Virus record (IMG/VR): IMGVR_UViG_3300034072_002211
Span: 213,445-277,444 of that record
Length of the DNA stretch: 64,000 nucleotides
Direction: 5' to 3' (one strand)
The notes below the pieces were generated by a model, which worked only from the letters and a program-made list of their open reading frames with translations, was not told the DNA's origin and did not search any database. Made by a program: the position numbers and the translations under genes. Of the stretch, positions 2,275 through 54,930 are shown in pieces. Numbering within the stretch: position 1 is the stretch's first letter; each line of letters begins with the position of its first letter.

Positions 2275-2354
2275 GTCCGATCTCCTTTGTGCCTATGTCC
2301 TGGTTGTAACACCTAACTTGTGGGCGTCAACCAGTTTGGAACACAGGATTCAGA

Positions 2355-3125
2355 TTAGCGGCTCAGCTTCATGAGCATTGCGGTGTCTCGGAGGCTGTTG
2401 GGCATCCGCATGATCTTCTTGGTTGCGTTGTTCTCAAGCGGGATGCGGTCCCGCTCACCGGTGTCCACGCTCTCGATGACCACGCGGCGTTCGTCCGCAA
2501 AGCCCTTGACCATACAGATGTCCAGCCCTGCCCCATAGTTCAGGGCCACCACGACCAGATCACCGATTGTGACTTCCTGATCCAAACGGTCGGTGAAAGT
2601 CAGCGGACGCTTCGCTTCATTGATCTGGAAGACACGATCGCCCTGATAGTCGAGCAGAACGCTCAGATTGTTGTCCACCTCATTGCCGAAGAACTCAGGG
2701 TAGATGGTGGCTTCCTTAAACACGATCGGCTTGGTCCCGCTCAGGGTATAAATCCATGCTGCTCGTTTGGACCATGCCCAGCCCTTGTTCTTGTCAAAGT
2801 CCTTGACGAAGAAGCTCAGGGGAGTGCCACCGCCCTTGGTCAGACGCACATCGTTCTTGGGCTCGACCGTTGCCGCGAAGCTTGGACCATAGTCACCAAA
2901 GTTGGAACGCGGACCCTCTACCATTGCGGGAAAGATGCTGCCGCGGAAGATGCCGTTGTTGATCTTGATCCAGACCTCGCCCTTGAGAGTAGCCAGGCGA
3001 TCCAGCAAAGCATCACGCTCTGCGATCTGCTTGACTTCCTTGGCTGTGAGGTTCTGAGTGGGCACGAAGTTAGAACTCACATGCCACCAGTGATCCATGT
3101 TGGTCTGGCGACGAAGCTCAATCAT
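2355..3125 (-). CDS. hypothetical protein with C-terminal SH3-like module
   Basis: C-terminus resembles that of 38874..39665. Confidence 0.7.
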   Translation of the reverse strand: MIELRRQTNMDHWWHVSSNFVPTQNLTAKEVKQIAERDALLDRLATLKGEVWIKINNGIFRGSIFPAMVEGPRSNFGDYGPSFAATVEPKNDVRLTKGGGTPLSFFVKDFDKNKGWAWSKRAAWIYTLSGTKPIVFKEATIYPEFFGNEVDNNLSVLLDYQGDRVFQINEAKRPLTFTDRLDQEVTIGDLVVVALNYGAGLDICMVKGFADERRVVIESVDTGERDRIPLENNATKKIMRMPNSLRDTAMLMKLSR

Positions 3126-3430
3126 ACAAAGAACTCCACATTGGGATACATAGCCCGACGATACGCGATTGCCTCGCCGTTGAGCCAGGGTGCGTGACTG
3201 GTCAACGCGGGAGCCAAATCAGGTCTCCTAAACGCCCGAGCCCAGCTGTATTGGACGTGGGGTTGATCTTCATAGAAGGCGATAAAGCGGCGATCACGCA
3301 CCTGCTTCGAAAACGATTTGGACCAGCTCTTCCTCGCATGGAGGATCACCAGCGGGTGAACGTGTGGACTGGCATTCCGGCGCATCGCTGCGACCAGTCC
3401 CAAGCTTTGCCCTCTTAGCTGTTTCCTCAT
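3122..3430 (-). CDS. hypothetical basic protein
   Basis: ORF overlapping the next start by 4 nt. Confidence 0.5.
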   Translation of the reverse strand: MRKQLRGQSLGLVAAMRRNASPHVHPLVILHARKSWSKSFSKQVRDRRFIAFYEDQPHVQYSWARAFRRPDLAPALTSHAPWLNGEAIAYRRAMYPNVEFFV

Positions 3431-3770
3431 TGAACTTCCGTAGCATCACTGAGTCCTGTGTCAAACCCAGATAGTTGCGAATTGATTGGTTCCCGGCCAG
3501 AGCCTTCTCCAACTTGCTTGTGGGAAGACAGCTCAGGAACCCGTTGACTTTGGAGCAATATAGGGCGAGGATCTTTGCGTTCTTCCAGCGCACGATCCAC
3601 CATGTCTTGGTATTGGATTTGCGGCCCACATAGTTGCTCTTGTGGCCGTTCTTTATCTGATCACGCAGGGCTAGCCACTCATGGTGTTCCATATTGTGGA
3701 TGCCATATCGTTCACCCAAGCGAGCGCGGAAGTGTCTCCAAGCGCCGCGCTGGGTTTTCTGAAAGTTCAT
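3294..3770 (-). CDS. hypothetical protein
   Basis: ORF with RBS; 3' end overlaps the neighbour by ~135 nt. Confidence 0.55.
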   Translation of the reverse strand: MNFQKTQRGAWRHFRARLGERYGIHNMEHHEWLALRDQIKNGHKSNYVGRKSNTKTWWIVRWKNAKILALYCSKVNGFLSCLPTSKLEKALAGNQSIRNYLGLTQDSVMLRKFNEETAKRAKLGTGRSDAPECQSTRSPAGDPPCEEELVQIVFEAGA

Positions 3771-3895
3771 TCCTTAGCTCTGGTATAACGATATCGCGGA
3801 TCGCTATAAAGCCAAATGCCAAAGTGAGCAATGTGCCGACCATGTTTCACCCCAGAAAAGTGACAGAACAGGTGTCTTTCCAGTAAACTGACATC

Positions 3896-4456
3896 ATGGC
3901 CAACTGGGAATATATTCTGTTCGATCTGGAGTGTAATGGGTTCAAACCTGACAAGATCTGGGTGATCTCGATGGTTGATCTCATTTCACGCGAGAAGGCA
4001 AGCTTCGTCGGTGCTGAGGCCATAGCAGAAGCCATCCTGCGACTGCAAGACGCAAAGCTGCTCGTGGGTCACAATATCAAGACCTTTGATATCAGGGTGA
4101 TTGAGAAGATCATGGAGGGTGCCGTGACGTTCGATCGCAATCGTGTCCTTGATACTCTCCACATGAGCAAGGCGCTTGTGAAGATGGACAATCACAAGCT
4201 TGAGGGCTGGGGTGAACTGCTGGGCAAACCCAAGCTGGACACACCATTCAGCTTCTACAGGTATGACCCCAGGATGGTTCCCTACTGTGAGCGGGACGTG
4301 GAACTCAACTTGGATGTGTTCTTGGCTCTCTGGAGCATCATGGAGCAACGCCACGGAGAGAAGATTCCTCCCAAGTGGCAGATGCTCACTGAGTATAGGC
4401 AAAGCCTGCCTAGCGCGACACCAAGCCCAGACCTCCCTGGATCCGGCCATCTTTGA
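3896..4456 (+). CDS. stand-alone 3'-5' exonuclease, PolA/T7 gp5 proofreading type
   Basis: FDLECNG ExoI, GHNIKTFD ExoII, DTL, YCERDVELN ExoIII. Confidence 0.85.
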   Translation: MANWEYILFDLECNGFKPDKIWVISMVDLISREKASFVGAEAIAEAILRLQDAKLLVGHNIKTFDIRVIEKIMEGAVTFDRNRVLDTLHMSKALVKMDNHKLEGWGELLGKPKLDTPFSFYRYDPRMVPYCERDVELNLDVFLALWSIMEQRHGEKIPPKWQMLTEYRQSLPSATPSPDLPGSGHL

Positions 4457-4808
4457 TGTTGAGGTCCTGGAGGCGCGCATTGCGCCATTTGTTCGCCTGG
4501 TAAGCGCCATCGCATACTTGTAGAACCAGACACCAACCAAATAGTTTACGGCGGGGTTTGAAGCAAGTCGGCAGGGCATCACTGTCACGAGGACTGATAA
4601 GGCTCTGAAGACTCATATTGGTCAGATCCTGTAGTGTGACATCACACCATTCAGAGCCTTTGAACACCCACCGAGGACTCACGTATCCTTTTACTACTTC
4701 AATCCGCATTTCCATTTGCAGGACGATCAACGGATCTCGGAACAGACGACCCTGCAGTCTGAAACGAAACTGATCCGTTCGAATACGGCGGATATCGCCC
4801 TCTTGCAT
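4410..4808 (-). CDS. hypothetical protein
   Basis: ORF coupled to upstream stop. Confidence 0.55.
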   Translation of the reverse strand: MQEGDIRRIRTDQFRFRLQGRLFRDPLIVLQMEMRIEVVKGYVSPRWVFKGSEWCDVTLQDLTNMSLQSLISPRDSDALPTCFKPRRKLFGWCLVLQVCDGAYQANKWRNARLQDLNIKDGRIQGGLGLVSR

Positions 4809-5353
4809 TAGGGAATAATCTCCACAAAGGCCCGCTTCTTCTTGGGACCCAGTTCGTGACGGCCGAGCTCAAGAGGCTTGTCCCAGCCGTTCTTACGTGC
4901 TTGGCTCACGCTGGGGAAGAAGCCCAGATCCACCATCAGGTGGGCCATGAGGGGCTTGTTCTCGGCTTCCATTTCAGACTTGCTGATCTTCTGCGCGGGC
5001 TTTTGTGGATTGCCGTCGGGACCAATGTCCCACCAGCCCATAGCAGCGCCACGCTGGATACCTTCCTCATTGCGCCGCTTCAGATCCTCGAGGAACTCTG
5101 CCTTGGTCTGTCCACCCCAGAACTCCAGGTCATCGTCACGAACAATCGTGAACTCATGATCACCGAAGAAGAATGTGCCACGAAAGCCTTCGCCGGGCAT
5201 GGGAACGTCCACCCCATGAGTTTCGTGGATCTGATGGATCTTGGTCTCGATGAGGTTGCCCATCCACCAGATCTCTTCCTCTTCCTCGCGAACCGTCTGA
5301 ATGGTCTGGAAGCCGGGGCCTATGAAACGGCCAGTTGGGAAAAGAACTTTCAT
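4808..5353 (-). CDS. hypothetical protein with C-terminal S4-like motif
   Basis: LMVDLGFFPSVSQARKNGW resembles the TyrRS S4 motif; GGAG RBS before ATG 5353. Confidence 0.6.
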   Translation of the reverse strand: MKVLFPTGRFIGPGFQTIQTVREEEEEIWWMGNLIETKIHQIHETHGVDVPMPGEGFRGTFFFGDHEFTIVRDDDLEFWGGQTKAEFLEDLKRRNEEGIQRGAAMGWWDIGPDGNPQKPAQKISKSEMEAENKPLMAHLMVDLGFFPSVSQARKNGWDKPLELGRHELGPKKKRAFVEIIP

Positions 5354-5385
5354 GTCACCGCTCCTAAGCGAGGACTGGTGAGTTG

Positions 5386-5778
5386 TCAACCAGAAACTTC
5401 ATCGCTCACCATAAGTTCCATCAGCTTGGTGCGCTCCTCGGCGGACATCGTGTTGTCACGGACCAACTTGGTCATCCGATCCCAGATGTCGCGCTGGACT
5501 GCCGAGACGCCGTTGACGAACCGACCCTTGTCATCGTGGATGATGGTCTTCCACCACAGGTAGTCGGTCACGGTGAGCTCAAGCCGATAACCGTCGGCGA
5601 GCTTGCCCTTGATCAGCGTGGGCACCTCGATGGAACCAAACTCTTTGGCCGTCTCATCGTCGATGATCTTGACAAGAGCCTGGTAGAACTGAAGGAAGAC
5701 ATCATGCTCCCGTGCTTCGCGTTCACGCGAGCCGGTGATGATGGAAGTAAGCGTCTCGAATGCGCGGAAAGAAATCAT
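5386..5778 (-). CDS. hypothetical protein
   Basis: ORF with GGAG RBS. Confidence 0.7.
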   Translation of the reverse strand: MISFRAFETLTSIITGSREREAREHDVFLQFYQALVKIIDDETAKEFGSIEVPTLIKGKLADGYRLELTVTDYLWWKTIIHDDKGRFVNGVSAVQRDIWDRMTKLVRDNTMSAEERTKLMELMVSDEVSG

Positions 5779-5823
5779 GGTTTGCTCCTTTGAGCCACCA
5801 TATATGCGGTGATTGGTGAGAGA

Positions 5824-6117
5824 TCAACTCTCCAGGCTGCGGCGAATGATGTTCTTGCCGGCCTGGCGCTGCTTGCGCTGGGGTTCCTTGACCTGGCTCT
5901 TGCGGTAGATATAATCGTGACCGTTGAGCTTGAAGCCGCCCTCGTTGTCGATGGTCGCAGTCTGGCACTTGTCCATCTGGATGGCACCGTCCTGACCGCG
6001 GAGGATCGCGTCGTCCTTGCGACCGCGCCAGGCCCAAAGACCGGCCGCATCGCGCTGACGGTTGCGGTGAATGGCCTTGATGAGACCAGCGTCACGGTTG
6101 CGGTAGGTGCGAGCCAT
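5824..6117 (-). CDS. small basic hypothetical protein
   Basis: GGAGATC RBS, host-like codon bias. Confidence 0.7.
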   Translation of the reverse strand: MARTYRNRDAGLIKAIHRNRQRDAAGLWAWRGRKDDAILRGQDGAIQMDKCQTATIDNEGGFKLNGHDYIYRKSQVKEPQRKQRQAGKNIIRRSLES

Positions 6118-6234
6118 CGTCGATCTCCTAAAAGAGGTTGGGGAATGGCGGATGCTTAACTCAGCTCTTCGAGCCTATTTCAACACCCGGGCTCCACGCC
6201 CCGTATCACCTAATTAGCAGAACTGGTGACTCTG

Positions 6235-6741
6235 TCAACCAGAAAGTTTGTCCAGTTTGTCACAAAGTGTCTGGAAACGTTCTGAGGTCAATTCCCACTC
6301 TTCCCCGGTGGGCTTCAGAGATAGAACGGTGCGGACCGCGTGTTCGCGTTCTTCATCCACGATAGCGCCGCGCTTCTCTTGGATGATGCGCGATGTCTCG
6401 TTCTTCTTGTTATAACCGCTGCGAAGCTCGTCATAGAGCCCCTCGCCTCGCCAGAGGTTGATCATCTCGCGCATCAGCGTCTGATAGATTCCAAGGCGCC
6501 GCCAAGACGGAAGCGTATAGGCTCCTGTGATGTAGACTTTTCGATGGGCTTCGATAGGTGCGAAGATCACCATAGAAATCGGTTGGCCATTATAATAGAT
6601 GGCTGCGAAATGGTATAGTTCGGTGTTGGGCCAGTTGCTGGCCATTCCCCGCCGTGCCATTTCATTCTTATACCAGAGGTTCATCTCCGCGATCTCGGGA
6701 GCATTGCCTATCTGGCTCATTCGGAACATGATTTCACCCAT
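6235..6741 (-). CDS. GNAT family acetyltransferase
   Basis: YTLPSWRRLGIY acetyl-CoA motif A and N..SR motif B. Confidence 0.75.
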   Translation of the reverse strand: MGEIMFRMSQIGNAPEIAEMNLWYKNEMARRGMASNWPNTELYHFAAIYYNGQPISMVIFAPIEAHRKVYITGAYTLPSWRRLGIYQTLMREMINLWRGEGLYDELRSGYNKKNETSRIIQEKRGAIVDEEREHAVRTVLSLKPTGEEWELTSERFQTLCDKLDKLSG

Positions 6742-6779
6742 GTGCCTACTCTAACATAGACACATGGGAGGTCAACACC

Positions 6780-6917
6780 TTACTTGAGTTTGCTGAGTAG
6801 GTCCAGCATGTCCGAGGGGATGGTTTCCTGGACCCGGAAGCGAGACTGAAGGGTTTCACCGATCATGGCCATTTGCTGCTCCTCTTTTGTCTTTGGAGCC
6901 AGTTTAACGCACCTCAT
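6780..6917 (-). CDS. NepR-like anti-sigma peptide, 45 aa
   Basis: Not in ORF track; MRCVKLAPKTKEEQQMAMIGETLQSRFRVQETIPSDMLDLLSKLK matches the IG..L...F...E..P....LL..L pattern; ATGA overlap with upstream gene. Confidence 0.55.
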   Translation of the reverse strand: MRCVKLAPKTKEEQQMAMIGETLQSRFRVQETIPSDMLDLLSKLK

Positions 6918-7291
6918 ATGGAATCGTTGCGAGTTTTCACCACAAACCTCTCCGGCTCTGAATCTCCCAACTTGACCAGCGCCGCTATGTCAGATGGGAC
7001 GATCACATAAAACTCAACACGTCGGAGCGAATCATCGTCCGATCCTGCCACCCTCATCATAGGACCAACCGGTCTCCATTCAAAGCCCAGAATGGCATTG
7101 TGCTTAAGGAATTCTCCTAACCTAAGTAAGGCAATTCCCGTGGCTCCTCCCTCAACGAGCCAGCGCAAATGCCGGTGCTCTGTCTCCCAGTCGCTCGTGT
7201 CCGTGTAGATGCCGCTGTAACACACTGTAGTCGCACACAAGTGGACCCGCGTGTGACCCTCTGAGAGCTCTGCCAGGGTGCTCATATCCAC
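6914..7291 (-). CDS. hypothetical protein
   Basis: ORF in operon. Confidence 0.6.
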   Translation of the reverse strand: MDMSTLAELSEGHTRVHLCATTVCYSGIYTDTSDWETEHRHLRWLVEGGATGIALLRLGEFLKHNAILGFEWRPVGPMMRVAGSDDDSLRRVEFYVIVPSDIAALVKLGDSEPERFVVKTRNDSI

Positions 7292-7650
7292 GGACGCAGA
7301 CCCTTGAGGATCTCTTCGCGTTCGTTGACGTCAATGGGCCCAATGCCAAGAGCCGTGATCATAGGACGCGGGAACACGGTCTTGCCTGCATCCTTGATCA
7401 GAGCCGTGCCGCACTTTCCCTTGTAGAGACGGCTCAGCTGATGGAGCGTCTCCTCGCTGGCGTGTAGGCAAACCTTGCCCACGATACCAGTGTCGCGATA
7501 GGCTTTGACCTGCTCTGGATGGTTGTCCATTGCGTCGAAGATAGCCTCGGTGAATGCGTGACCGATCTGGGCACCCATCTTTCCGCGGTTACCGCCTGCG
7601 GCTTTCACTGCTTCGTCGCTCACGATACAGTAGAGTTTGATATCAGGCAC
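7282..7650 (-). CDS. peptidyl-tRNA hydrolase, PTH2 family
   Basis: GKMGAQIGHA, IKDAGKTVF, TALGIGP. Confidence 0.85.
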   Translation of the reverse strand: MPDIKLYCIVSDEAVKAAGGNRGKMGAQIGHAFTEAIFDAMDNHPEQVKAYRDTGIVGKVCLHASEETLHQLSRLYKGKCGTALIKDAGKTVFPRPMITALGIGPIDVNEREEILKGLRPWI

Positions 7651-8023
7651 TGTTCAGTCTTTCCCACATGAGTTCTTGTTTAATACGAGGATTCTTTGCT
7701 CCATAGTAGGCAACGCCTGCCCTAAAGAGCTTGATTTCCAATGCATGCCTGGGTTCTGGATCAAAAGGCCTCATGCCTTTGTCGCAGGCTTGCTTGTAGA
7801 TCTTTGCTAAGTTCCAGAGTTGTCGCATATTGATTCTCTGGTAGATTTTGAGGACTTCAAGCGAAGAGGATAATCGCACCACATCACCCAACTGTAGGGC
7901 GGTGTTCACCGCAAGCTTTTGCTTGGTGACTAGATGATTCTTAAGGGCGAGGAAATGGACCGCTGCTTCGGCTCGCAGGTCCTTGATCTTTTTAGATCGC
8001 TGGTGGGTTTCCTCGAATGTCAC
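7643..8023 (-). CDS. hypothetical protein
   Basis: ORF in operon. Confidence 0.55.
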   Translation of the reverse strand: MTFEETHQRSKKIKDLRAEAAVHFLALKNHLVTKQKLAVNTALQLGDVVRLSSSLEVLKIYQRINMRQLWNLAKIYKQACDKGMRPFDPEPRHALEIKLFRAGVAYYGAKNPRIKQELMWERLNSA

Positions 8024-8053
8024 TCCTCAGAGTAACAGGAGGTTGATCCTAGA

Positions 8054-8209
8054 TCAACCCTTTAGGATGACGCAAGCTTCCTTGCAGCAGGTGCCGCACT
8101 TGACCGCGCAGCCTAGGAACTGGTAAGCTTGGTGGGGAGATTTCGCGCCGGCCTGCTTGGCCTTAAGGATCTTTCCCTCGTTCAGGTTGTTACAAACACA
8201 GATGACCAT
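8054..8209 (-). CDS. bfd: Bfd-like [2Fe-2S] protein, 51 aa
   Basis: Not in ORF track; MVICVCN...CGTCC; GGAGG RBS and TAAATA upstream. Confidence 0.85.
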   Translation of the reverse strand: MVICVCNNLNEGKILKAKQAGAKSPHQAYQFLGCAVKCGTCCKEACVILKG

Positions 8210-8257
8210 AAACCCTCCACCAGTATCGCACCTATTTAAGCGATCAGGTGAGAGTTG

Positions 8258-8536
8258 TCAAATGCGTTGTAGCTTGAGCATCATGGCGCTCGCCATGCCG
8301 TGCTTCTTGGCGTGATAGTAGATCTCGCCTTCTCGATAGAACTGGAGGAGAGGGCTGGGGATAACCTTTGTGGCATCAGCGCCAGCTACGATAAAGGCTT
8401 CAAGAGTTGAAGCCGTTTCCTCCCATGCTTGTCGCATGTTGAGACCTTCGAACCGCCGCTTCCCAGGGCTGATATAGACTTGGCGGGCCTCGTGACAGGC
8501 CCGCTTTGTCCGTTCCCTGAGGTCTTTGAGAGTCAC
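8258..8536 (-). CDS. hypothetical protein
   Basis: ORF ending AMMLKL. Confidence 0.6.
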   Translation of the reverse strand: MTLKDLRERTKRACHEARQVYISPGKRRFEGLNMRQAWEETASTLEAFIVAGADATKVIPSPLLQFYREGEIYYHAKKHGMASAMMLKLQRI

Positions 8537-8814
8537 GCCTTGCCGAAGGTCTTGTCGAGCAGGCCGGTCAGCACCGCGCGCGGCTCATCGTCGGTCGCGC
8601 CGGTGTCGCTGAACTGGACCATCACATCGACCACAGCCGTTTCCACGGTGTCCCGGTCCATGCCGGCGTTGACGCAGTCGGTGAACTTCTCGTTCAGGCG
8701 GAATGCCGCACGAGCGAGCCGCGTTTCGGATTTGCGGTCGGCAGCAACGAGCTCCCAGTCATCCGCCGAGAGGTTCGGGTTCTCGATTTTCGTGCTTGCG
8801 GTCAGTGCGGGCAT
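8533..8814 (-). CDS. hypothetical protein
   Basis: ORF with RBS. Confidence 0.7.
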   Translation of the reverse strand: MPALTASTKIENPNLSADDWELVAADRKSETRLARAAFRLNEKFTDCVNAGMDRDTVETAVVDVMVQFSDTGATDDEPRAVLTGLLDKTFGKA

Positions 8815-8832
8815 TTTGTGTCTCCCCTCGGG

Positions 8833-9126
8833 TTATGCGGTTTGGTTAGCAGGTTGTGACTTTGCGTCAACCGCTTCGTTGAGAACAGCGCGGAACTTCA
8901 TGAAGTCCTCGCCGATGTTGTCACCGAGCAACCCCTTAGCGATCTCCGCCAAGTTGCTGCCCTGAACGTTGGGAGCAAGAGTGAGCACCTTGCTCATGCG
9001 GCCCCACTGGATCGGCGCAACGCTGGCAAAGTGACCCCGATATTTGAGGTAGCCGAGGACGCTGGGGTCCAGTTGCTCCCTGAGGGCCCACTCGAACCAC
9101 TCGTTGAAGTCTGCTTCGATACGCAT
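8833..9126 (-). CDS. hypothetical protein
   Basis: GGAGG RBS before ATG 9126. Confidence 0.65.
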   Translation of the reverse strand: MRIEADFNEWFEWALREQLDPSVLGYLKYRGHFASVAPIQWGRMSKVLTLAPNVQGSNLAEIAKGLLGDNIGEDFMKFRAVLNEAVDAKSQPANQTA

Positions 9127-9136
9127 GGAGCCTCCC

Positions 9137-9598: not shown

Positions 9599-9670
9599 TT
9601 CCGATCTCCTGTCTGCGTTTCCGTATCACCAGTTCTATAGCAAACTGGTGAGCAGTCAACCAGAATCTGG

Positions 9671-9955: not shown

Positions 9956-10016
9956 TGCCGATCTCCTAGTTATTGCCCACCAATTTAATACAAAGAGGTG
10001 AGGTGTCAACCAGAAA

Positions 10017-12167: not shown

Positions 12168-12190
12168 TACATCATCGTAAAGCTTTTTGT

Positions 12191-46927: not shown

Positions 46928-46939
46928 ACTTGACTCACA

Positions 46940-48262: not shown

Positions 48263-48339
48263 AGTGCCAGCTTGCTTCCAAATTGGAATAGAGTCAACCA
48301 TTCATGGCGAAGCCCCGGAGCGTCCTCCGGGGCTTGCTC

Positions 48340-48576
48340 TTACTTCACGAAGTTGGGCTGACCTTCCTTCACGGTCCAAGTAAGCTGGATCCAACCCGCT
48401 GGAATGTAGTGCGACTTACCGTCGGCGCTGAAGATCCGATGACCTCCCGAGTCGCTGACGCTGAGCTGCTCGGGGTTCTGAATCTTCACGAAACCCTTGC
48501 TGCCGAAGTTGTAGACGCGTTCAGCCTCGCTGCTGATATCAGTGAACTTGAGGCCGCTTTCATTCTTGAATGCCAT
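48340..48576 (-). CDS. conserved hypothetical phage protein
   Basis: GGAGA RBS; flanked by terminator hairpins. Confidence 0.75.
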   Translation of the reverse strand: MAFKNESGLKFTDISSEAERVYNFGSKGFVKIQNPEQLSVSDSGGHRIFSADGKSHYIPAGWIQLTWTVKEGQPNFVK

Positions 48577-48653
48577 AGTAATCTCCTATTCTAGTAATCC
48601 CGTAGGACACCAGAGTTTAACAGAATAGGAGACTGTGGGTCAGTATTCATGGC

Positions 48654-48683
48654 GAAACCCAGACCGTTTCTGGTCTGGGTCTC
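48654..48683 (-). terminator. terminator hairpin downstream of GOLLD-like RNA
   Basis: GAAACCCAGACC/GGTCTGGGTCTC. Confidence 0.6.
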
Positions 48684-48699
48684 ATAATGTGGTCACCCT

Positions 48700-49735
48700 G
48701 AGAATGTCGGGTGACCGTCCCGGTCTCTGCGGATTATTCCCTGGATCCTACTCCAGGTATTCCCGCTCACTCCATCACCCTTGCGGGTGTAACCGGTCGT
48801 GCCGCCGTTTTTAACGTCAGGCAGTAGACGTGTCACCATATGCTTTTCGACAGTTTCCACCACACCTGCCTTCGGGGCAGTTAAGGCTTGCGGGCCCTAT
48901 ATGGCTTTCTCTATCAACAACGTCTGGATTGGGTACCAGCTCGCCGCCCTAGTTAGCTTGCGCCCCAGGGATTAGGCACTTTCGAGGTTTCCCTCATACA
49001 CATGGCCGAGTCAGGCTTTCCGTTTTTGACAGCAATGTCCAATATGCTATTACCTGCTAGGAGGTAACCCAGAGAGAAGTGCTGACTCAGTAGTTCCAAG
49101 GCCTTTTGAACCTCAGAATGCTACACTCCTCGTATCGTTCGGCTTGCGGGCCTACTAAATCGGTTTACAGGACTTGTCTGGCTTTTTACACCAACCAAAC
49201 CCTTTGACCTGCCATGAGCCCTAGGCGCGACCCTCGGACAACATGACTACCTCTTGCCACTCGATAGTAAACCTGTTTGAGTAGAGGACGCTGGGGTTAC
49301 AAGGCCCCATTCACCGGCCGCTCGTCGCCACCGGGATTATCGTGCTTTCGCACGGCAGTCGTTCTCAGGTCGTCCTACCTACTGCCACTGCTCCTTGGGA
49401 GAGCTTGACAGTCCCTCTTTTGGAGGGCAGGTGAGGATGCGTGTATTGATCCGAACCGAAGCCCGGACGGCTGGGGATGGGTCCCTTCACCACTTACTTG
49501 GGTTACCCCAAGCTACCACCACACGCGGTAATCTCTTGAAACTTTCGAGTCTCCAACTTAACACCGAAGTGTTTCGCCGTCAACTAAAAAGTTTCCGATC
49601 GATCCCTCTGCGGCGCCACACTCCCCTCGACCAGCTATCTCTGCTTCACTTAGACTGAGGATCCTTTCGGAAACCCCAGGCCTTGTTCTGCTCCTGCTGA
49701 CCTTCGAGGTGTGTAGCACCGCGTTGGTCTCATCG
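48700..49735 (-). ncRNA. GOLLD-like giant ornate RNA, ~1030 nt
   Basis: ORF-free; TTGACG promoter at 49757-49762; many GCAA/GAAA/CAAAAG hairpins; 3' motifs CGAAAGTGCCTA, CCGCAAG..TTAA, GACCGGTT, GGAATAATCC match my recollection of GOLLD. Confidence 0.7.
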
Positions 49736-49784
49736 TTCTATGTTCAACCAGTGTCTGCGTCAACAACAAAAATGCCATCCCGCA

Positions 49785-49968
49785 AACTTTTTTCTCCTCC
49801 AGGAGAAAACCAGGGTCCATAGACGTTTTGGGCCCCCAAGAGAGTTGAATCTCCTGGGGACCCATCGTGGGAGTTTCCTCCTACGTCCCTCTGCGTCTGC
49901 TCCGGTTCGAGTGTCTGGCTCACGAAGTCCAGCTGACCTTACCTTAGCGTCTGCGTTGGTTCATAACA
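49785..49968 (-). ncRNA. small RNA paralogous to the 5' end of the giant RNA
   Basis: Own TTGACG promoter; four collinear shared blocks. Confidence 0.6.
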
Positions 49969-50034
49969 TCTAGCTTTGCGACCCACAGGACGTCAACAAC
50001 CCTTTTTCAAAGAACTGTGGACAACTCTGTGAGA

Positions 50035-50845
50035 GATGCCATGGGCCCGACACCGAAGTGCCGAGCCCACGAAATGTAATGTGCTTGCCTGTGAAAAACA
50101 AGCTTTACACTGGTGTGTTCACCGAGCCGAGATCAACAGAACGCTGAGGCGCTTGGCCAATGGAACCGTTGTCTTGTGTGGTAGTGGCAGGCGAAGCAAT
50201 GGCGCCGTTGTCGCCGAACAGGAATTTGAATGGTCGGAACAAAAGCTTGCCTTGACCGGACAGCTTGTGGAGCGAGAGTCTAATCATGCTACTATTTATG
50301 CTGATAGGTTTAGAGCTCCTGGAGCCGAAACCCCAGGAGCTCAACCAGTTGACCGAAGTCTCTTGGTATTAGAGTAGGTTTCCAGCATAGGTCCAAAGAC
50401 CACTAAGTTGGTTCCTTGCTCTAACGTCGGTTTAGGGGATAGCTAACCGAAATCAACTATCCCCAACCGACAACAAGCCGAAGCCTGCTGTGGTCTCTGT
50501 GCCAGTGTCTGGAGGTTAGCCGAAGCCACACCATCGCAGTCTTTACACAAAGCCGGTTCTGGGACCCTAGTAGGCCGAAGCTTTCCAGGGTCCCAACCGA
50601 GCAAACCGAAGTTTGCTGGCTTTTGTGTAGGGTTCTGCTGTTGCTATGATCGGGCCCGAAAGCCGTCTCAGGGAGTTCAGCAGTCCTTTCACAAAACTCG
50701 GGTTTAGACCAGCTGGGTGTTCATCCGAAGATTACTAGCGCCAGCTGGTCAACCGATGAAAACCGAAGTCTTCATGGTCTCGAAAGTGTTTTGCCGCTGA
50801 GAACAAAACCGAAGTTCTGCGTCATCATTAGCATCTGCGCTTCCG
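50035..50845 (-). ncRNA. ~800-nt RNA with four tandem UUCG-capped structural repeats
   Basis: About 11 c(UUCG)g or UUUCG hairpins; repeated GGTTG..CTAAACC helix; G-U pairs favour the minus strand. Confidence 0.65.
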
Positions 50846-50911
50846 ATGCTCGCTATGTATGTGACCCGTCCGTGCCGCGCAAGAACTTTTTACAGGACAA
50901 TTACGATTTTG

Positions 50912-50932
50912 TGTGAATAAGATTGTGGATAA
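50912..50932. promoter_or_regulatory. two tandem DnaA boxes
   Basis: TGTGAATAA 50912-50920 and TGTGGATAA 50924-50932; another TTATTCACA at 51303-51311. Confidence 0.5.
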
Positions 50933-50933
50933 C

Positions 50934-51284
50934 TTAGGACGGATCCGTGAAGACCCAGCCTGACTGGCTTGCTCTCTCGACGAGCATTTCGGAGAATCGC
51001 TCCATGACCTCATCTCCGTCCATGTTACAAGGCCAGTGGGCATCAGCATATTCCAGCCCGATAGCATCCATGAGATAGCCGCGCTCATATGTGTCGAGCG
51101 AGGGCGGACCCCATTTGAGAATCAGCGAGCCGCTATAGCCGGTAATGAGAAGACGCATCAGCCGAGGATGCTTCATAATGATCGCTGCGAGCAACGCTCG
51201 ATTGGGCGCGATCAATCCACGCTCTTTGAGGGTGTTGTCACACACCTCCAGGTGCTGGGCGCTCAACGTGGATAATCGCGGCAT
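50934..51284 (-). CDS. hypothetical protein
   Basis: ORF with promoter. Confidence 0.65.
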   Translation of the reverse strand: MPRLSTLSAQHLEVCDNTLKERGLIAPNRALLAAIIMKHPRLMRLLITGYSGSLILKWGPPSLDTYERGYLMDAIGLEYADAHWPCNMDGDEVMERFSEMLVERASQSGWVFTDPS

Positions 51285-51641
51285 CCCTGTTACCTTTTCC
51301 AGTTATTCACAGTTTGTGGTAACATAGGTGGAGAGGCTGTCAACCAGGAATGTCGTCCGGGGCAGGTTGCCCTACCGGCGGCATGGACGGCCATCCTTCC
51401 ACCCCCTCGCGGGCCGGACGTGCTCCCCCGCCGACCCGGGTCGCAAGCGTAATCGGCGGGTTAGATGCTATCTGCTAGAAACCACCGCAACAAAATATGC
51501 GTAAAACCACGTAGCGCGCTCGCAAGGAAACGACCCCGACTTTTTTATCGTCGGGGTCGCCTCTGCAATGGTTCGTTGCTATCTCAGGGAGGTCGGATAG
51601 CAGAAGTGCTATTAAGCGTGACGCGCTTTAGCGTCAAGCGT

Positions 51642-52061
51642 TCACTTCTTGAAATCTGTCCCCGTCCGGCACCCGCGCTGGCCGCCCTTACCGTCAGGGC
51701 GAGGAATGAACACCAGTGCCATGCCGGTCTTATATGAGGAGTCTTCCTTTTCGAGGAACTCACAGCCCGTGGCCTTGTCCCTGTAGATGTAGACTCCGGC
51801 GTCTGCCTCGGACCCCACGACCTCGAAAGGATAGCTGGCTCGTTCTGCTGCTTCGTCAGCCGCCTGCTGGTTCATCATATCCGATGAACTCTGGTCGAGC
51901 TCTTCCTCGGTCATGTTGCCCGTCGGTGACTGGGCGTTGCCCAGCAGCTCTACCTCTTCCTGAGGCAAGAGGGTAGCTTGATCGATCGGCTGGACCGGGT
52001 CGGGTTGCTTGTTACAAGCCGCCAGAGCTACCAGGCCAGCGAGAACAACGATCTTCTTCAT
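51642..52061 (-). CDS. lipoprotein
   Basis: LAAC lipobox; YRDKATGCEFL. Confidence 0.75.
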   Translation of the reverse strand: MKKIVVLAGLVALAACNKQPDPVQPIDQATLLPQEEVELLGNAQSPTGNMTEEELDQSSSDMMNQQAADEAAERASYPFEVVGSEADAGVYIYRDKATGCEFLEKEDSSYKTGMALVFIPRPDGKGGQRGCRTGTDFKK

Positions 52062-52070
52062 GGATCCTCC

Positions 52071-52451
52071 TTAGCCCCGCGGAACAGAGAACGTGATCTC
52101 CAGGCGGGTGCTGGGATCCTCGCAATAGGCTTCATAGTAGGTCTCGGTGTCCACGTAGGACATCACAGCCTCGCCAGCTTCCAAGACGAGCTTGATGCCC
52201 ATGAGCTTCTTCATGTCTTCGCGGTTGAGCGTCGACACGGTGAAGGTCACCTGCGAGGTGCCTACTGACGATGTTTGGATGTAGAGTTCGAGGCGTTCCG
52301 AGAGGTAACGCTTCTGCGCTTCAGCTTGAGTTTGCGGGCGGCGCAGATACATGGAACCGTTGGGCTTCTTAGCCTGCTCCTCGGTCCACTTCGCAAGCCA
52401 CTCCACGGTGGCCTTTGCCATATTGATTTTCATCAACGCCTCCTTTCGCAC
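52071..52451 (-). CDS. hypothetical protein
   Basis: ORF with promoter. Confidence 0.65.
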   Translation of the reverse strand: MRKEALMKINMAKATVEWLAKWTEEQAKKPNGSMYLRRPQTQAEAQKRYLSERLELYIQTSSVGTSQVTFTVSTLNREDMKKLMGIKLVLEAGEAVMSYVDTETYYEAYCEDPSTRLEITFSVPRG

Positions 52452-52486
52452 CTGGATCTAACACCAGGTGAGGAGGTGTCAACCGC

Positions 52487-52867
52487 TTATACGAAGCGAG
52501 CCCGCTGAAGCAGCAAGGCCGTGAGTTCGGCCATATTGGCCACGCCCATCTTGCGATAGATTTTGCTGATGTGGACACGAACAGTGGATATCTGGGTGCC
52601 AGTTGCCTCGCTGATCTTGTCAGCGGTGTTACCATCCACAAGCAGGTTCAAGACCCGATACTCGGCAGGGCTGAGCTTGAATTCACCTTTGACCCACTCC
52701 AGGTCATATGGCTTATCGAAAACAACCAGGACCTCTTTGAGTAGGTCTTTGGTTTCGCGGTCAGGTGCCACCTTTATGAAGGAGGCAACTCTGTCTCGGA
52801 TCCCTGCCATATGCGGAACCTCAGCCGGAGCCATCGATGCCATTTCAACCTTCATGATCATTATCAA
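52487..52867 (-). CDS. LuxR-type HTH regulator
   Basis: LSPAEYRVL.L...G...KI......STVRVHISKIYRKMGV. Confidence 0.9.
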   Translation of the reverse strand: MIMIMKVEMASMAPAEVPHMAGIRDRVASFIKVAPDRETKDLLKEVLVVFDKPYDLEWVKGEFKLSPAEYRVLNLLVDGNTADKISEATGTQISTVRVHISKIYRKMGVANMAELTALLLQRARFV

Positions 52868-52938
52868 TTGTTCATATTGAACAGTTTGGTCACCTTGTCA
52901 AACAGAATTTCAATTTAATCCGTTAGTTTGACGCAGAA

Positions 52939-53958
52939 TTACCAATTACAAGCGATTGCCCATCGCCTGTCATGCAGGATTTTGTTAAGGTCGTGACCAA
53001 AGTCCAGTGCGGTTGCTTCCATTCTCTTGGCTTCTTCTCCTGTCGCAACTCGCCCAGCACTTGCCATAGCCCGGTGACAAAAGCCGATTATCTCACTGTG
53101 ACGCTTGACGAATTCCTCGATTCTGAACTTGGCCCACCATTGCTCGCTATGGAAATATCGCTCAGGGATCCAAGTAGAGATATAAACCGTTGTGGCCCCT
53201 GGCTTGCCATTGAACTCAGAGGACGTTAGCGATTCATATGGCGACTGCTCTACCTTGGTTTCCTTGATGCCATCGACGAATCTGGCATTGTGGAAACCCC
53301 AACCATGCTGATTGACATGCGTTTCTGTGAAGCTCATCTTGGCCAATAGAGCGCCGCCAGAGAAGGGAATGAGCATATTGTGGCCCAGCTCATCGCCCAG
53401 ATAGTGGTGGGCGAGAGCAAACGTATTGGCGTATTGAAGCCACTCTTCGATGTTTTCCGAGAGGTAGCGCAGTGGTTCTCTGTTCACGAGACCACGTTGG
53501 ATCATGCGGTAGAGGGTGTGTTCGTTGACCACCACAAAGCTGCTGAGCCAATCAGCGACGATCTTCTTTCGTCCTACCGTGACATTGGCATGCTTGAGAT
53601 CTAGGTAGTTCTCGCGCCGCTCAGCGATCTCGGGATTGTTGGGCTCGGTCATTGCCATGAGCACATGATCCCAGAAGAACATGGAATCTTGGATGGTGCT
53701 CGGACCATCCTCTTCGATGCGAACTTTTCCCGACGTGACTCCGAAACCGTTCAGCTTGTCTTGTAGCTGCGAAACCAGCTTACGTCGGGTGAGCTTTTGT
53801 TTGGTTTCGCCCAGCGAGCCCCTGGAATAATAGCCGCCACCCGGTGGGCGAATCAGATCTGCGAATGTCTTCTCGATGCGCTCAGGGCGCTTTTTACCAA
53901 GAAGACGCAGTTCCTCTTTGACGAGGCCCCACGCCAACTTGTCATACTCTTCGCGCAC
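52939..53958 (-). CDS. hypothetical protein
   Basis: 339-aa ORF with RBS. Confidence 0.7.
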   Translation of the reverse strand: MREEYDKLAWGLVKEELRLLGKKRPERIEKTFADLIRPPGGGYYSRGSLGETKQKLTRRKLVSQLQDKLNGFGVTSGKVRIEEDGPSTIQDSMFFWDHVLMAMTEPNNPEIAERRENYLDLKHANVTVGRKKIVADWLSSFVVVNEHTLYRMIQRGLVNREPLRYLSENIEEWLQYANTFALAHHYLGDELGHNMLIPFSGGALLAKMSFTETHVNQHGWGFHNARFVDGIKETKVEQSPYESLTSSEFNGKPGATTVYISTWIPERYFHSEQWWAKFRIEEFVKRHSEIIGFCHRAMASAGRVATGEEAKRMEATALDFGHDLNKILHDRRWAIACNW

Positions 53959-54010
53959 CGTTCGATCTCCAATTGCGCTAAAGCTTTAGCACCAAGGAGA
54001 CCCCTGTCAA

Positions 54011-54868
54011 TCAGAACGAGAACGTCTTACCGATCATCCTGGATGCGAGGATTGCCATGCGCTCGTTGACGAGATCCTCGAGACTGGCAAGCATCTCATC
54101 CAAGCGTTCCAACGGAACCTTGCGCTTGGTGAGATCCTGATCAGCACCATAACCCCAGTCCATCTGAACCGCGGGATGGCGCTTAAAGTTCTTGGTGTGG
54201 CCGAGTTCCTCGATACCAGACTCCGACCACTTCTTCAGTCGGAAGCGACCAGTGTGGAGAAACTGCGCGAAGGCTTCAGCGAAAATGTCCAGCTCATTGG
54301 AGATCAGCTTGTCCCGCGCACTCTTCATCGTGAAAAGCCAGTTGGCCATGAAGCCAATGGTATAGCGGTTACCATCGAAGCAAGTGAAGGAACCGTCCTT
54401 GATATATTTGGCGCGGATGCTACCCTGATAGTGAACACCATAGGCCTCAGTCCAGACATCATCCAGGCCGGCGAACAACTCGAATTCAGGACCTTGGTTG
54501 CGAGGGAAGGTGGAATCAAAGGTGCCCACGGCATCCCCCGTGGCCATTGCGTGACTGAGCCGATGAAACATGATCCATGAGGTCATGGGGATCCAGTTCT
54601 TCTCAGTGGTCACGTTGTTACAGAGGACCAGATTGACCTTGTCCTCGTGAACAGGCTGCTCGGAAACCAGTGCCCTCATGTCCCTGAGAGCCCCTACGAG
54701 AACCGTGACGTTGAAGGGGTAAACAGAGCGCTCGAGGTTGCGACGAACCTTCTTCATGGCCTTCTGTGAGTCAAAGAACTCGAAGTCGCCGGGATGCCAG
54801 TTACCACCGGGGCGGCTACGTGCGCGCTCCTTGGGATCAATGATCTTAACTGACAAGCAGGACTTCAA
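54011..54868 (-). CDS. hypothetical protein
   Basis: ORF with GGAGATC RBS; HR..H motif. Confidence 0.7.
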   Translation of the reverse strand: MKSCLSVKIIDPKERARSRPGGNWHPGDFEFFDSQKAMKKVRRNLERSVYPFNVTVLVGALRDMRALVSEQPVHEDKVNLVLCNNVTTEKNWIPMTSWIMFHRLSHAMATGDAVGTFDSTFPRNQGPEFELFAGLDDVWTEAYGVHYQGSIRAKYIKDGSFTCFDGNRYTIGFMANWLFTMKSARDKLISNELDIFAEAFAQFLHTGRFRLKKWSESGIEELGHTKNFKRHPAVQMDWGYGADQDLTKRKVPLERLDEMLASLEDLVNERMAILASRMIGKTFSF

Positions 54869-54930
54869 AGTCGATCTCCTCTGGTTTCCTACGCTCTAAC
54901 ACCAGTTTGGTGTTTGTCAACCAGACACGG

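What the first reader, a model, noticed from the sequence alone, without database searches (positions are those of the whole stretch)
2281..54920. Repeated ~60-bp promoter-stem-loop-RBS cassettes give most small genes their own promoter
Seen: GTCAAC (minus-strand TTGAC) precedes more than 30 genes by eye. Near-identical cassettes GATCTCC..GTTTCCG..ACTGGTGA..GTCAACC occur at about 9600-9661, 14360-14420 and 38169-38229, with a related copy lacking ACTGGTGA at 43004-43066. At 9626-9650 and 38193-38220 the -10 region lies in the loop of a TCACCAGT/ACTGGTGA inverted repeat. Known: T4-like PeSL elements have this design and act as recombination sites that shuffle accessory genes.
Basis: partly seen in the sequence, partly recalled or inferred. 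Interest (0 to 1): 0.6.

Follow-up and report, generated by a model that had tools for sequence, protein, structure and literature searches.

The report
Promoter-hairpin cassettes in a jumbo phage
The repeats are real: about 40 compact host-type promoter units, half with a hairpin built over the -10 box, each fill the whole gap in front of a small early gene of a roughly 450-kb phage of rhizobia-like bacteria; they are built like the PeSL cassettes of T4-type phages, but a role in gene shuffling could not be shown.

Summary
The window is the early or accessory arm of a 277-kb fragment of a ~450-kb jumbo phage; its nearest cultured relatives are Sinorhizobium phage Phosso and Agrobacterium phage Atu_ph07. 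A position matrix finds 40 minus-strand promoters in the window and none on the plus strand (genome: 93 v 6). The consensus is A-rich/stop codon, CTGG-TTGAC, 16 nt, TGyTA, which is the alphaproteobacterial sigma-70 type. Seven are followed by ATG exactly at the predicted start site (leaderless). Twenty-three carry a short leader with the extended SD GGAGATCG. Hairpins spanning the -10 occur in 225 of 430 promoters across five phages, against 104 in shuffles. Many have unrelated arm sequences. They end at the predicted start site, lack U-tracts, and tolerate G·T over A·C mismatches 44:22, which points to a role in read-through RNA. The four named cassettes are 55-77% identical, not near-identical. 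About 40% of gene junctions carry a cassette, not most. Gene-content breakpoints against three relatives are not enriched at cassettes (OR 1.16, p=0.67). The relatives are distant, so power was low. The design matches PeSL, but the recombination role stays untested. No RNA data exist.

The parts
2272..57609 (-). Array of 40 promoter cassettes. Window coordinate of the T of TTGAC for each: 2330, 5389, 6238, 6775, 8870, 9659, 10009, 10825, 11498, 12201, 13927, 14418, 18926, 19514, 20464, 20517, 21364, 23859, 26510, 27703, 28197, 31510, 34285, 38227, 38870, 39699, 40305, 43063, 46565, 46846, 49583, 49763, 51343, 52482, 52901, 54010, 54920, 55153, 56689, 57601. The -10 TA lies 22 (21-23) nt downstream of each.
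   Evidence: Matrix scan. Classes: 7 leaderless, 23 with SD plus start codon, 2 in front of tRNAs, 8 with no start codon in reach. 24 of the 40 have a stem of score >=10 spanning the -10.
9596..9667 (-). 9-bp stem with arms at 9643-9651 and 9626-9634 and the -10 in the loop. Leader of the CGGAAACG type, SD GGAGATCG, ATG at 9598-9596.
   Evidence: (MFE -14.8, z -2.2)
14355..14426 (-). Only a 5-bp ACCAG/CTGGT stem; same leader family. It precedes a gene (13932-14357) that all three relatives lack.
38165..38235 (-). 11-bp perfect stem with arms at 38212-38222 and 38191-38201 around the -10.
   Evidence: (MFE -21.2, z -4.6)
42998..43071 (-). From the -10 to the ATG it matches its G003 orthologue at all but one position, while the downstream protein is 56% identical.
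18867..18934 (-). A further member of the CACCAG family, with a 10-bp stem (arms 18911-18920 and 18891-18900).
   Evidence: (z -3.6)
13877..13935 (-). Promoter of the class I lysyl-tRNA synthetase gene. A 9-bp stem of unrelated sequence (GGGGCTAG type) sits around the -10.
   Evidence: (MFE -24.4, z -5.6)
6739..6783 (-). Leaderless promoter: ATG 12 nt after the T of the -10 TA. The 12-bp stem of unrelated sequence has a 3' arm that covers the ATG.
   Evidence: (z -5.1)
21311..21372 (-). An 18-bp stem pairs the promoter spacer with the SD region, so the SD is closed in read-through RNA and open in the gene's own RNA.
   Evidence: MFE -25, z -7.8; SD paired 1.00 in read-through v 0.05 in own RNA
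38819..38878 (-). An anti-SD (TCTCCTTTCT) in the spacer pairs with the SD. The G003 orthologue of this promoter and a G001 promoter (G1_42954) that by position precedes the G001 orthologue carry stems of the same kind; the G001 orthology is inferred from gene order, because the script listed no promoter there.
52434..52490 (-). Nested stem: CACCTGG/CCAGGTG around the -10, plus an outer CCTCC/GGAGG pairing to the SD.
   Evidence: (z -3.2)
11462..11506 (-). Leaderless promoter. The ATG position is kept in the G001, G002 and G003 orthologues. In W, G002 and G003 (not clearly in G001) a stem spans the -10; the arms differ in sequence and register.
27667..27711 (-). Leaderless promoter with a CACCAG-type spacer; ATG at TA+12.
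5351..5397 (-). Leaderless promoter (ATG at TA+13) with an imperfect TCACC/GGTGA stem.
40268..40313 (-). Cassette promoter placed directly in front of a tRNA with anticodon CTA.
56654..56697 (-). Cassette promoter placed directly in front of tRNA-Lys(CTT).
2272..2338 (-). Best-scoring promoter of the window (30.5), with a leader of the ATAGGCA type. Its G003 orthologue has an 11-bp stem that this copy lacks.
49548..49771 (-). Two promoters (49583 and 49763) with no start codon in reach, inside an ORF-poor stretch that is conserved in relatives.

Best explanation
Each cassette is a complete, compact expression unit for host RNA polymerase in the early or accessory arm of a jumbo phage of an alphaproteobacterium.

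Shown from sequence:
- The stop codon of the upstream gene lies a median 9 nt before the -35.
- The layout is then TTGAC, a 16-nt spacer and an extended -10 (TGyTA).
- What follows the -10 is either an ATG exactly at the predicted +1 (leaderless) or a 15-30 nt A/C-rich leader with SD GGAGATCG and a start codon.
- About half of the promoters carry a stem-loop. Its arms lie in the two free parts of the promoter (the spacer and the region from -10 to +1), and its 3' edge coincides with the predicted start site.

Inferred:
- The hairpin is absent from the gene's own mRNA, so it acts on RNA that reads through from the upstream unit.
- There it marks or insulates the end of that unit by attenuation, processing or 3'-end protection.
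- In a minority of cassettes it also closes the SD, so that only transcripts from the gene's own promoter are translated.
- The intergenic gap is exactly one cassette long, so the promoter is the only place such a hairpin can sit.
- Cassette families shared by unrelated genes could also give homology patches for recombination, as proposed for PeSLs. That step is not shown here.
For: Promoter:
- Strand asymmetry is 93 v 6 genome-wide and 40 v 0 in the window.
- The consensus resembles the S. meliloti sigma-70 motif CTTGAC-N17-CTATAT (PMC2873474).
- GTTGAC-N14-TGYTA occurs 50-60 times in each of G001, G002, G003 and the cultured Sinorhizobium phage Phosso, against 0-2 for the control pattern.
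- 12 of 95 promoters put ATG or GTG at TA+12/13 (plus one at 15), with none at 16-25. This register is kept in orthologues.

Hairpin:
- At least 6 contiguous pairs span the -10 in 38% of promoters, v 6% in shuffles.
- 225 of 430 promoters in five phages have stems, v 103.5 +/- 7.6 in shuffles.
- Stems are enriched even in promoters with no CCWG motif: 15 v 4.1.
- 38 of 64 strong stems have unrelated arm sequences, and 5 have the arms swapped.
- Spacer ACCWG predicts a downstream CWGGT, OR 30, p=3e-9.
- Phosso shows the same design with TTCCTAT/ATAGGAA arms: 8 v 2.2.
- The 6238 orthologue set has 4 of 11 pairs with compensatory changes.

RNA level:
- G·T v A·C mismatches inside stems are 44:22, p=0.009; shuffles give 0.53.
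- Hairpins are enriched in the promoter core (46 v 7) and upstream of the -35 (20 v 6), but not downstream of the start site (4 v 5).
- The 3' ends of the stems cluster at TA+8 to +14.

Compactness: the median distance from stop codon to -35 is 9 nt.
Against: - There are no transcript data, so the promoters and start sites are predictions.
- The hairpins lack U-tracts: only 3 of 54 have >=4 T in the next 8 nt. Terminator-like sites are not enriched, 18 v 17. Classical intrinsic termination is therefore unlikely, and the precise RNA function is open.
- Hairpin presence is not conserved at orthologous promoters beyond what independence predicts: both 11, one 17, none 8 of 36 pairs.
- Fixed-column covariation is weak because the registers differ.
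- SD occlusion as a class does not exceed the shuffled-spacer control, 0.46 v 0.52.
- The G·T bias rests on 66 mismatches.
Confidence: 0.6

Rival explanations
1. The cassettes exist mainly as PeSL-type recombination linkers. Homologous exchange between them inserts, deletes and swaps small genes, and may form mini-circles. The promoter and hairpin are what make each shuffled module self-sufficient.
For: - 25 cassette pairs are >=70% identical at 39 positions outside the consensus, and none has homologous downstream proteins.
- Cassettes 9659, 38227, 18926 and 14418 are closer to paralogues (74-77%) than to their orthologues (38-64%).
- The window-specific units 13932-14357, 54011-54868 and 20644-21311 have a cassette on both sides.
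- The mechanism was shown experimentally for RB49/phi1 (PMC2839356).
Against: - Synteny breaks are as frequent at junctions without cassettes (89 of 138) as with them (63 of 93): OR 1.16, p=0.67.
- Variable genes are not significantly more often cassette-flanked: own promoter OR 1.9, p=0.17; both sides OR 1.1.
- Several window-specific genes have no cassette nearby (44012-45013, 41660-42082, 59358-60284).
- On average, orthologous cassettes are more alike than non-orthologous ones (44% v 30%), which indicates mostly vertical descent.
- The joint 9623 to 14393 in the contigs is the paralogous cassette at genome position 209316.
Confidence: 0.2
2. The inverted repeat is an operator. A dimeric phage DNA-binding protein sits on TCACCAG..CTGGTGA over the -10 and switches the early promoters off together.
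For: - TCACC and ACCAG are enriched 14-17-fold in the spacer (29 of 95).
- The dyad centre clusters at -2 to +1 relative to the -10 TA.
- Phosso has its own preferred arm sequence, as a co-evolving repressor-operator pair would.
Against: - 38 of 64 strong stems have unrelated arms, and 5 have swapped arms, which a sequence-specific dimer would not read.
- Stems are enriched in promoters with no such motif.
- G·T is favoured over A·C 2:1, which has no meaning for double-stranded DNA.
- Some stems reach the SD or the start codon.
Confidence: 0.1
3. The hairpin acts in DNA. Cruciform or hairpin extrusion at the -10 makes the promoters dependent on supercoiling or on a structure-specific factor.
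For: - The stems are centred on the -10.
- Hairpin promoters are known for the virion RNA polymerase of phage N4 (from my own knowledge).
Against: - Full -35 and -10 boxes of the host type are present.
- Stems vary from 5 to 18 bp with loops of 3-14 nt.
- There is a G·T over A·C bias.
- Hairpins also lie upstream of the -35.
Confidence: 0.07
4. The repeats are only strong promoters. The complementarity is a by-product of descent from one palindromic ancestor cassette or of base composition.
For: - Hairpin presence is not conserved at orthologous sites beyond chance.
- Pyrimidine-rich spacers pair with purine-rich leaders by composition alone.
Against: - The excess over composition-preserving shuffles is 2- to 20-fold in five genomes.
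- Unrelated arm sequences and swapped arms occur.
- No excess is seen downstream of the start site.
Confidence: 0.03

Closest known systems
PeSL (promoter-early stem-loop) cassettes of T4-type phages RB49/phi1, T4/PST and KVP40/nt-1 (PMC2839356, PMC4122927)
   Same: Both fill the intergenic gap, about 60-75 bp. Both run from the stop codon in an A/T-rich stretch through a host sigma-70 consensus promoter, a stem-loop between or over the boxes, an SD and a start codon. Both are dense in arms full of small genes of unknown function, are shared by unrelated genes, and have genome-specific preferred stem sequences.
   Different: The host consensus is alphaproteobacterial (TGyTA, with no conserved last T). 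GC content is 54%. 13% of the units are leaderless. The SD is extended (GGAGATCG). The stems lack G/C tracts and U-tracts. The phage belongs to the Atu_ph07/Phosso jumbo clade, not the T-even group. Terminator activity, indel association and mini-circles, which define the PeSL function, are unshown or not found here.
T4 genes e, soc and 49: a late promoter inside a hairpin that closes the ribosome site in early read-through RNA
   Same: In a subset (21364, 38870, 52482, 54010, 28197 and others) the 5' arm lies upstream of the start site and the 3' arm holds the SD. Only the gene's own transcript has an open SD.
   Different: Here the promoter is a host-type early promoter and the arrangement is repeated many times. 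As a class, SD pairing does not exceed shuffled controls.
RNase III processing hairpins between the early genes of T7 (from my own knowledge)
   Same: These are also hairpins without U-tracts placed between successive early genes on read-through RNA, and they are compatible with processing and 3'-end protection.
   Different: The T7 sites do not overlap promoters and are longer, with internal loops. No cleavage data exist here.
Sigma-70 promoters of Sinorhizobium meliloti, CTTGAC-N17-CTATAT (PMC2873474)
   Same: The -35 is the same, and the -10 begins with CTA at almost the same spacing. This fits the rhizobial hosts of the nearest cultured relatives.
   Different: The phage version adds the upstream A-rich/CTGG block, a TG two bases before the TA, and a conserved spacer.

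Membership tests
PeSL cassettes (Arbiol 2010) | Intergenic, and dense in arms rich in small accessory genes | tested here: met
   Cassettes are concentrated at genome 164-271 kb on one strand. The median distance from stop codon to -35 is 9 nt.
PeSL cassettes (Arbiol 2010) | Promoter matching the host sigma-70 consensus | tested here: met
   By sequence only. Activity was not tested.
PeSL cassettes (Arbiol 2010) | AT-rich stretch upstream of the -35 | tested here: met
   A or T makes up 72-85% at positions -6 to -4 relative to GTTGAC, often including the stop codon. The stretch is short.
PeSL cassettes (Arbiol 2010) | Stem-loop between or over the promoter boxes, or just upstream | tested here: met
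   Promoter core 46 v 7 expected and upstream region 20 v 6; 225 of 430 v 104.
PeSL cassettes (Arbiol 2010) | The stem-loop terminates or attenuates upstream transcription | not testable with these tools
   No RNA runs exist. The missing U-tracts argue against classical termination.
PeSL cassettes (Arbiol 2010) | SD and start codon at the 3' end of the cassette | tested here: met
   23 of 40 in the window. Another 7 are leaderless, a class I did not see described in the parts of the PeSL papers I read.
PeSL cassettes (Arbiol 2010) | Indels and replacements between relatives are bounded by cassettes | tested here: inconclusive
   OR 1.16, p=0.67; OR 1.9, p=0.17. The relatives are only 60-70% identical and 64% of junctions are broken, so power is low. 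No closer relative was found.
PeSL cassettes (Arbiol 2010) | Mini-circles or deletions joined at cassettes | not testable with these tools
   Only contigs are held. The single joint is a paralogous copy.
PeSL cassettes (Arbiol 2010) | The carrier is a T4-type phage | tested here: inconclusive
   The DNA polymerase is nearest to Phosso (58%) and Atu_ph07 (52%), then to GAP32/CBB-like jumbo phages. T4-like phages match at <60%. A baseplate wedge homologue is present. The capsid module is missing from this fragment.
Promoter inside an RBS-closing hairpin (T4 gene e type) | The 5' arm lies upstream of the start site and pairs with the SD | tested here: inconclusive
   Clear in about 8 window cassettes, with SD pairing near 1.0 in read-through RNA v 0.0-0.3 in the gene's own RNA. 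The class mean is 0.46 v 0.52 in shuffles.
N4-type hairpin promoters for a virion RNA polymerase | A hairpin alone serves as the promoter, with no -35 or -10 boxes | tested here: not met
   Full host-type boxes are present in every cassette.
Rfam families | Match to a curated RNA family | tested here: not met
   Only tRNAs reach the gathering score.

The most novel reading that the evidence does not exclude
The cassettes are units of concerted evolution in a whole clade of ~450-kb rhizobial phages. Promoter-leader modules would be copied between unrelated genes, and between co-infecting phages, by short-patch recombination. The embedded hairpin would be a sense-strand RNA signal, read by a host or phage ribonuclease, that cuts the read-through RNA into one-gene messages. 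This would amount to a general system of one gene, one promoter, one processing site that allows free gain and loss of small genes.
Probability: 0.2. Interest if true: 0.65.

Novelty: new member of a known kind. Interest (0 to 1): 0.45.

Why it matters
PeSL-type cassettes have so far been described in T4-type phages of gamma-proteobacteria, with brief mentions for cyanophages. The same layout now appears in a distant clade of ~450-kb phages of alphaproteobacteria, built on a different host promoter consensus and with other stem sequences. That suggests it is a general solution for packing many independently expressed small genes. The sequence evidence points to the hairpin acting in read-through RNA: G·T tolerance, a 3' edge at the start site, and absence from the gene's own mRNA. 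Because the cultured Sinorhizobium phage Phosso shows the same design, the questions of hairpin function and cassette-driven gene turnover can be tested in a laboratory host. The promoter model and the leaderless class also give a ready set of start-site predictions for annotating these huge phages.

Tried and rejected
- A megablast of 7 kb and a blastn of one cassette against GenBank phages found no match.
- The E. coli-consensus promoter scanner misses most sites, because the -10 lacks the last T.
- A search for RNA runs found none. The sample is a subsurface metagenome held only as contigs.
I reject it as a deletion: the 10 letters between the two sides and the flanks match the paralogous cassette at genome position 209316, at the phage's own depth.
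- Fixed-column covariation over 151 promoters was weak, because the stem registers differ. RNAalifold on the 11498 orthologue set found no shared stem for the same reason.
- The G·T v A·C test on 208 promoters was not significant (17:11). It became significant only with 430 promoters.
- SD occlusion as a general rule is rejected: 0.46 v 0.52 in shuffles.
- Searches for closer relatives in viral and metagenome contigs found nothing above 87% protein identity.
- Reading TAG as a sense codon in 48.4-51.4 kb was tried once, because a tRNA with anticodon CTA is present. It opened no long minus-strand frame, and the standard code is kept.

Full report
**What is in the sequence.** Genes run on the minus strand. 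Read on that strand, each place has GGTTGAC, a spacer that often holds TCACCAG, then TGCTA or TGTTA, then a short leader ending in AGGAGATCG, a few bases and ATG.
- GTTGAC occurs 54 times on the minus strand and 19 times on the plus strand; GGTTGAC occurs 30 v 4 times.
- Aligning all minus-strand sites on the -35 gives the consensus A-rich, CTGG, TTGAC, then T and A at fixed positions 22-23 nt after the first T, preceded by TG.
- A two-block matrix built from these sites finds 93 minus-strand and 6 plus-strand sites in the 277-kb record at score >14.
- In the window it finds 40 minus-strand and no plus-strand sites at score >12.
- The sites concentrate at genome 164-271 kb.

**Two overstatements.** The four named cassettes are 55-77% identical over about 75 nt, so they are related rather than near-identical. 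In the window 37 of 92 gene junctions carry a cassette, so about 40% of genes have their own promoter, not most.

**The promoter and what follows it.** The motif is the alphaproteobacterial housekeeping type. S. meliloti uses CTTGAC-N17-CTATAT (PMC2873474). The phage version has the same -35 and a -10 that begins yTA, one base closer. The last T of the E. coli hexamer is not conserved, which is why an E. coli-type scanner misses most sites.
- The distance from the T of the -10 TA to the next start codon falls in sharp classes. It is 12-13 nt in 12 of 95 promoters, one at 15 nt and none at 16-25 nt, and 26-42 nt in 60.
- Twelve nucleotides after that T is the expected +1. The first class is therefore leaderless mRNA starting at the A of AUG.
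- The register is kept in orthologous promoters of three relatives. This is internal support for both the promoter model and the start site.
- The second class has an A/C-rich leader and the extended SD GGAGATCG. That SD occurs in 45 of 213 early-arm genes and in 4 of 244 others.
- Leaders fall into families (CGGAAACG, ATAGGCAAC and GGTAACAAC types) that recur in the relatives.
- In the window, 7 cassettes are leaderless, 23 have SD plus start codon, 2 sit in front of tRNAs, and 8 have no start codon in reach.
- The upstream gene's stop codon lies a median 9 nt before the -35. The cassette is therefore the whole intergenic spacer.

**The hairpin.** A stem that spans the -10 is much more frequent than chance.
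- At least 6 contiguous Watson-Crick pairs occur in 38% of the 95 promoters, against 6% after shuffling the spacer and the downstream part, and 8% at random genome positions.
- The mean folding z-score is -1.9.
- In 430 promoters from five phage genomes, 225 have a stem of score 10 or more, against 103.5 +/- 7.6 in shuffles.
- The excess is not one repeated palindrome. Of 64 strong stems in four genomes, 38 have unrelated arm sequences, 21 have CCWG in the 5' arm and CWGG in the 3' arm, and 5 have the arms swapped.
- Promoters with no such motif anywhere still show 15 strong stems against 4.1 expected.
- Within the genome, a spacer ACCWG predicts a complementary CWGGT downstream (20 of 33 v 3 of 62, OR 30). 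The swapped pair also co-occurs, while same-sense pairs are depleted.
- One orthologous set (6238) gives a consensus stem with compensatory changes at 4 of 11 pairs.
- Three findings weaken the case. Hairpin presence at orthologous promoters is no more conserved than independence predicts: both 11, one 17, none 8 of 36 pairs. Column-wise covariation is weak because the registers shift. So the stem is a frequent, fast-turning-over property of these promoters, not a fixed feature of each one.

**RNA or DNA.** Four observations point to the sense-strand RNA.
- Inside stems, G·T mismatches outnumber A·C by 44 to 22 (p=0.009; shuffles give 0.53). In double-stranded DNA the two are the same thing, so a bias has meaning only for a single strand of the mRNA sense.
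- Hairpins are enriched in the promoter core (46 v 7.0) and in the 47 nt upstream of the -35 (20 v 6.0). They are not enriched in the 47 nt downstream of the start site (4 v 5.0).
- The 3' ends of the stems cluster at 8-14 nt after the -10 TA, which is at the predicted +1. The gene's own mRNA lacks the hairpin, and RNA reading through from upstream has it.
- In a subset the 3' arm is the SD itself, paired with an anti-SD in the spacer (21364, 38870, 52482, 54010, 28197, 46846). The SD pairing probability is near 1.0 in read-through RNA and 0.0-0.3 in the gene's own RNA.

As a class, however, SD pairing does not exceed a shuffled-spacer control (0.46 v 0.52), so this is a special case and not the rule. 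The stems are not classical terminators. Their tails are 17% T, and only 3 of 54 have four or more T in eight. Terminator-like sites are not enriched in 20 kb (18 v 17). What the hairpin does to read-through RNA, whether attenuation, cleavage or 3'-end protection, is therefore inferred and not shown. The geometry has a simple reason. With the gap filled by the cassette, the spacer and the stretch from -10 to +1 are the only positions free to form arms.

**Whose genome.**
- The record is an IMG/VR virus contig of 277,444 bp, rated 60% complete, from a subsurface metagenome.
- The window encodes 21 tRNAs, a class I lysyl-tRNA synthetase, a seryl-tRNA synthetase, NAD synthase, PRPP synthetase and a DNA methylase.
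- The rest of the record holds a family B DNA polymerase, an NAD-dependent ligase, a Lon-like protease, a baseplate wedge protein and tail fibre proteins.
- The polymerase is nearest to Sinorhizobium phage Phosso (469 kb, 58%) and Agrobacterium phage Atu_ph07 (490 kb, 52%).
- Three uncultured relatives of 417-465 kb are collinear with the window at about 70% nucleotide identity.
- All four carry GTTGAC-N14-TGYTA 50-60 times, against 0-2 for the control pattern.
- Phosso shows the same hairpin-over-the-box design with other arms, TTCCTAT/ATAGGAA (8 strong stems v 2.2 expected), and the same GGAGATCG SD. The design is therefore a trait of the clade.

**The recombination idea.** I tested it in the ways the data allow.
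- Against each of the three relatives I scored every junction between neighbouring window genes as intact or broken, using presence or absence, or a spacing change of more than 300 bp. Breaks are as common at junctions without a cassette (89 of 138) as with one (63 of 93): OR 1.16, p=0.67.
- Genes missing from at least two relatives have their own cassette somewhat more often (13 of 31 v 17 of 62), but not significantly (p=0.17). They are not more often flanked on both sides.
- Some window-specific units are neatly flanked (13932-14357, 54011-54868, 20644-21311). Others have no cassette nearby (44012-45013, 41660-42082).
- On average, orthologous cassettes are more alike at free positions than non-orthologous ones (44% v 30%), which points to mostly vertical descent. 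A few (9659, 38227, 18926, 14418) are closer to paralogues (74-77%) than to their orthologues (38-64%).
- 25 cassette pairs are at least 70% identical at 39 free positions, and none has homologous downstream proteins. Either cassettes are copied independently of genes, or selection holds them at a family consensus.
- One cassette (43063) matches its G003 orthologue at all but one position from the -10 to the ATG, next to a protein that is 56% identical.
- The contig joint from 9623 to 14393 is the paralogous cassette at genome position 209316, not a deletion.
- No closer relative could be found. With 64% of junctions already broken, the test has little power, so the recombination role is neither supported nor excluded.

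**Comparison with what is known.** By the authors' own description, PeSLs consist of an AT-rich stretch holding the upstream stop codon, a host sigma-70 promoter, a stem-loop most often between the boxes or over the -10, an SD and an ATG. They are dense in arms of small unknown genes (PMC2839356; PMC4122927). All of these structural features are met here. The features that define what PeSLs do are terminator activity, indels bounded by cassettes, and mini-circles. Here they are untestable or inconclusive.

The differences are:
- an alphaproteobacterial promoter consensus;
- a leaderless class;
- an extended SD;
- stems without G/C tracts or U-tracts;
- a carrier from the Atu_ph07/Phosso jumbo clade rather than the T-even group.

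The SD-closing subset works like the T4 gene e arrangement, and the U-less intergenic stems resemble the T7 RNase III sites. Both comparisons come from my own knowledge. N4-type hairpin promoters are excluded, because full host boxes are present. No Rfam family matches the cassettes.

**Verdict.** This is a real, statistically strong feature that is correctly recognised as PeSL-like. I file it as a new member of a known kind, in a new phage clade and host class. The promoter reading is near certain on sequence grounds. Selection for the hairpin is well supported, and its action on read-through RNA is the best-supported but unproven mechanism. The gene-shuffling role remains open.

Noticed in passing
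window 40190-40268 (-), with its promoter at 40305: A tRNA with anticodon CTA (ARAGORN labels it tRNA-Pyl; Rfam tRNA at 48 bits) has its own cassette promoter, so it looks like an amber suppressor. Coding density under the standard code is 88%, so there is no sign of wholesale recoding.
   Followed up: partly
window about 48600-50900: An ORF-poor stretch with promoters at 49763 and 49583 but no start codon in reach. It is conserved at 66-77% nucleotide identity in G001, G002 and G003. Reading TAG as sense opens no long minus-strand frame. It may encode non-coding RNA.
   Followed up: partly
window 15307-18094 (+): A low-GC (46.5%) island of four plus-strand genes inside the minus-strand early arm. 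It includes a Laminin_G_3 (ConA-like) protein and a DUF4376 protein, which looks like a tail-fibre module. The island is absent from G002 and G003.
   Followed up: partly
window 5389, 6775, 11498, 12201, 27703, 31510, 39699 (coordinates of the T of TTGAC): Seven promoters put ATG 12-13 nt after the -10 TA, which predicts leaderless mRNAs. The arrangement is conserved in orthologues of three relatives.
   Followed up: yes
whole record; window SD sites such as 9600-9607: The extended SD GGAGATCG, which contains GATC, is nearly confined to early-arm genes (45 of 213 v 4 of 244) and is shared with phage Phosso. The phage also encodes an N6/N4 DNA methylase (57545-58618). No link between the two was tested.
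   Followed up: partly
window 12191-13885, 46940-48301, 1058-2113, 59358-60290: The window encodes a class I lysyl-tRNA synthetase, a seryl-tRNA synthetase, NAD synthase and PRPP synthetase, alongside 21 tRNA genes. PRPP synthetase and its neighbours are absent from the three relatives' syntenic regions.
   Followed up: partly
window 14361-14420, in run X1: A 3.1-kb contig at about 45 times the phage's depth carries a cassette with 7 differences. A more abundant related phage with the same cassette type is therefore present in the same sample.
   Followed up: no
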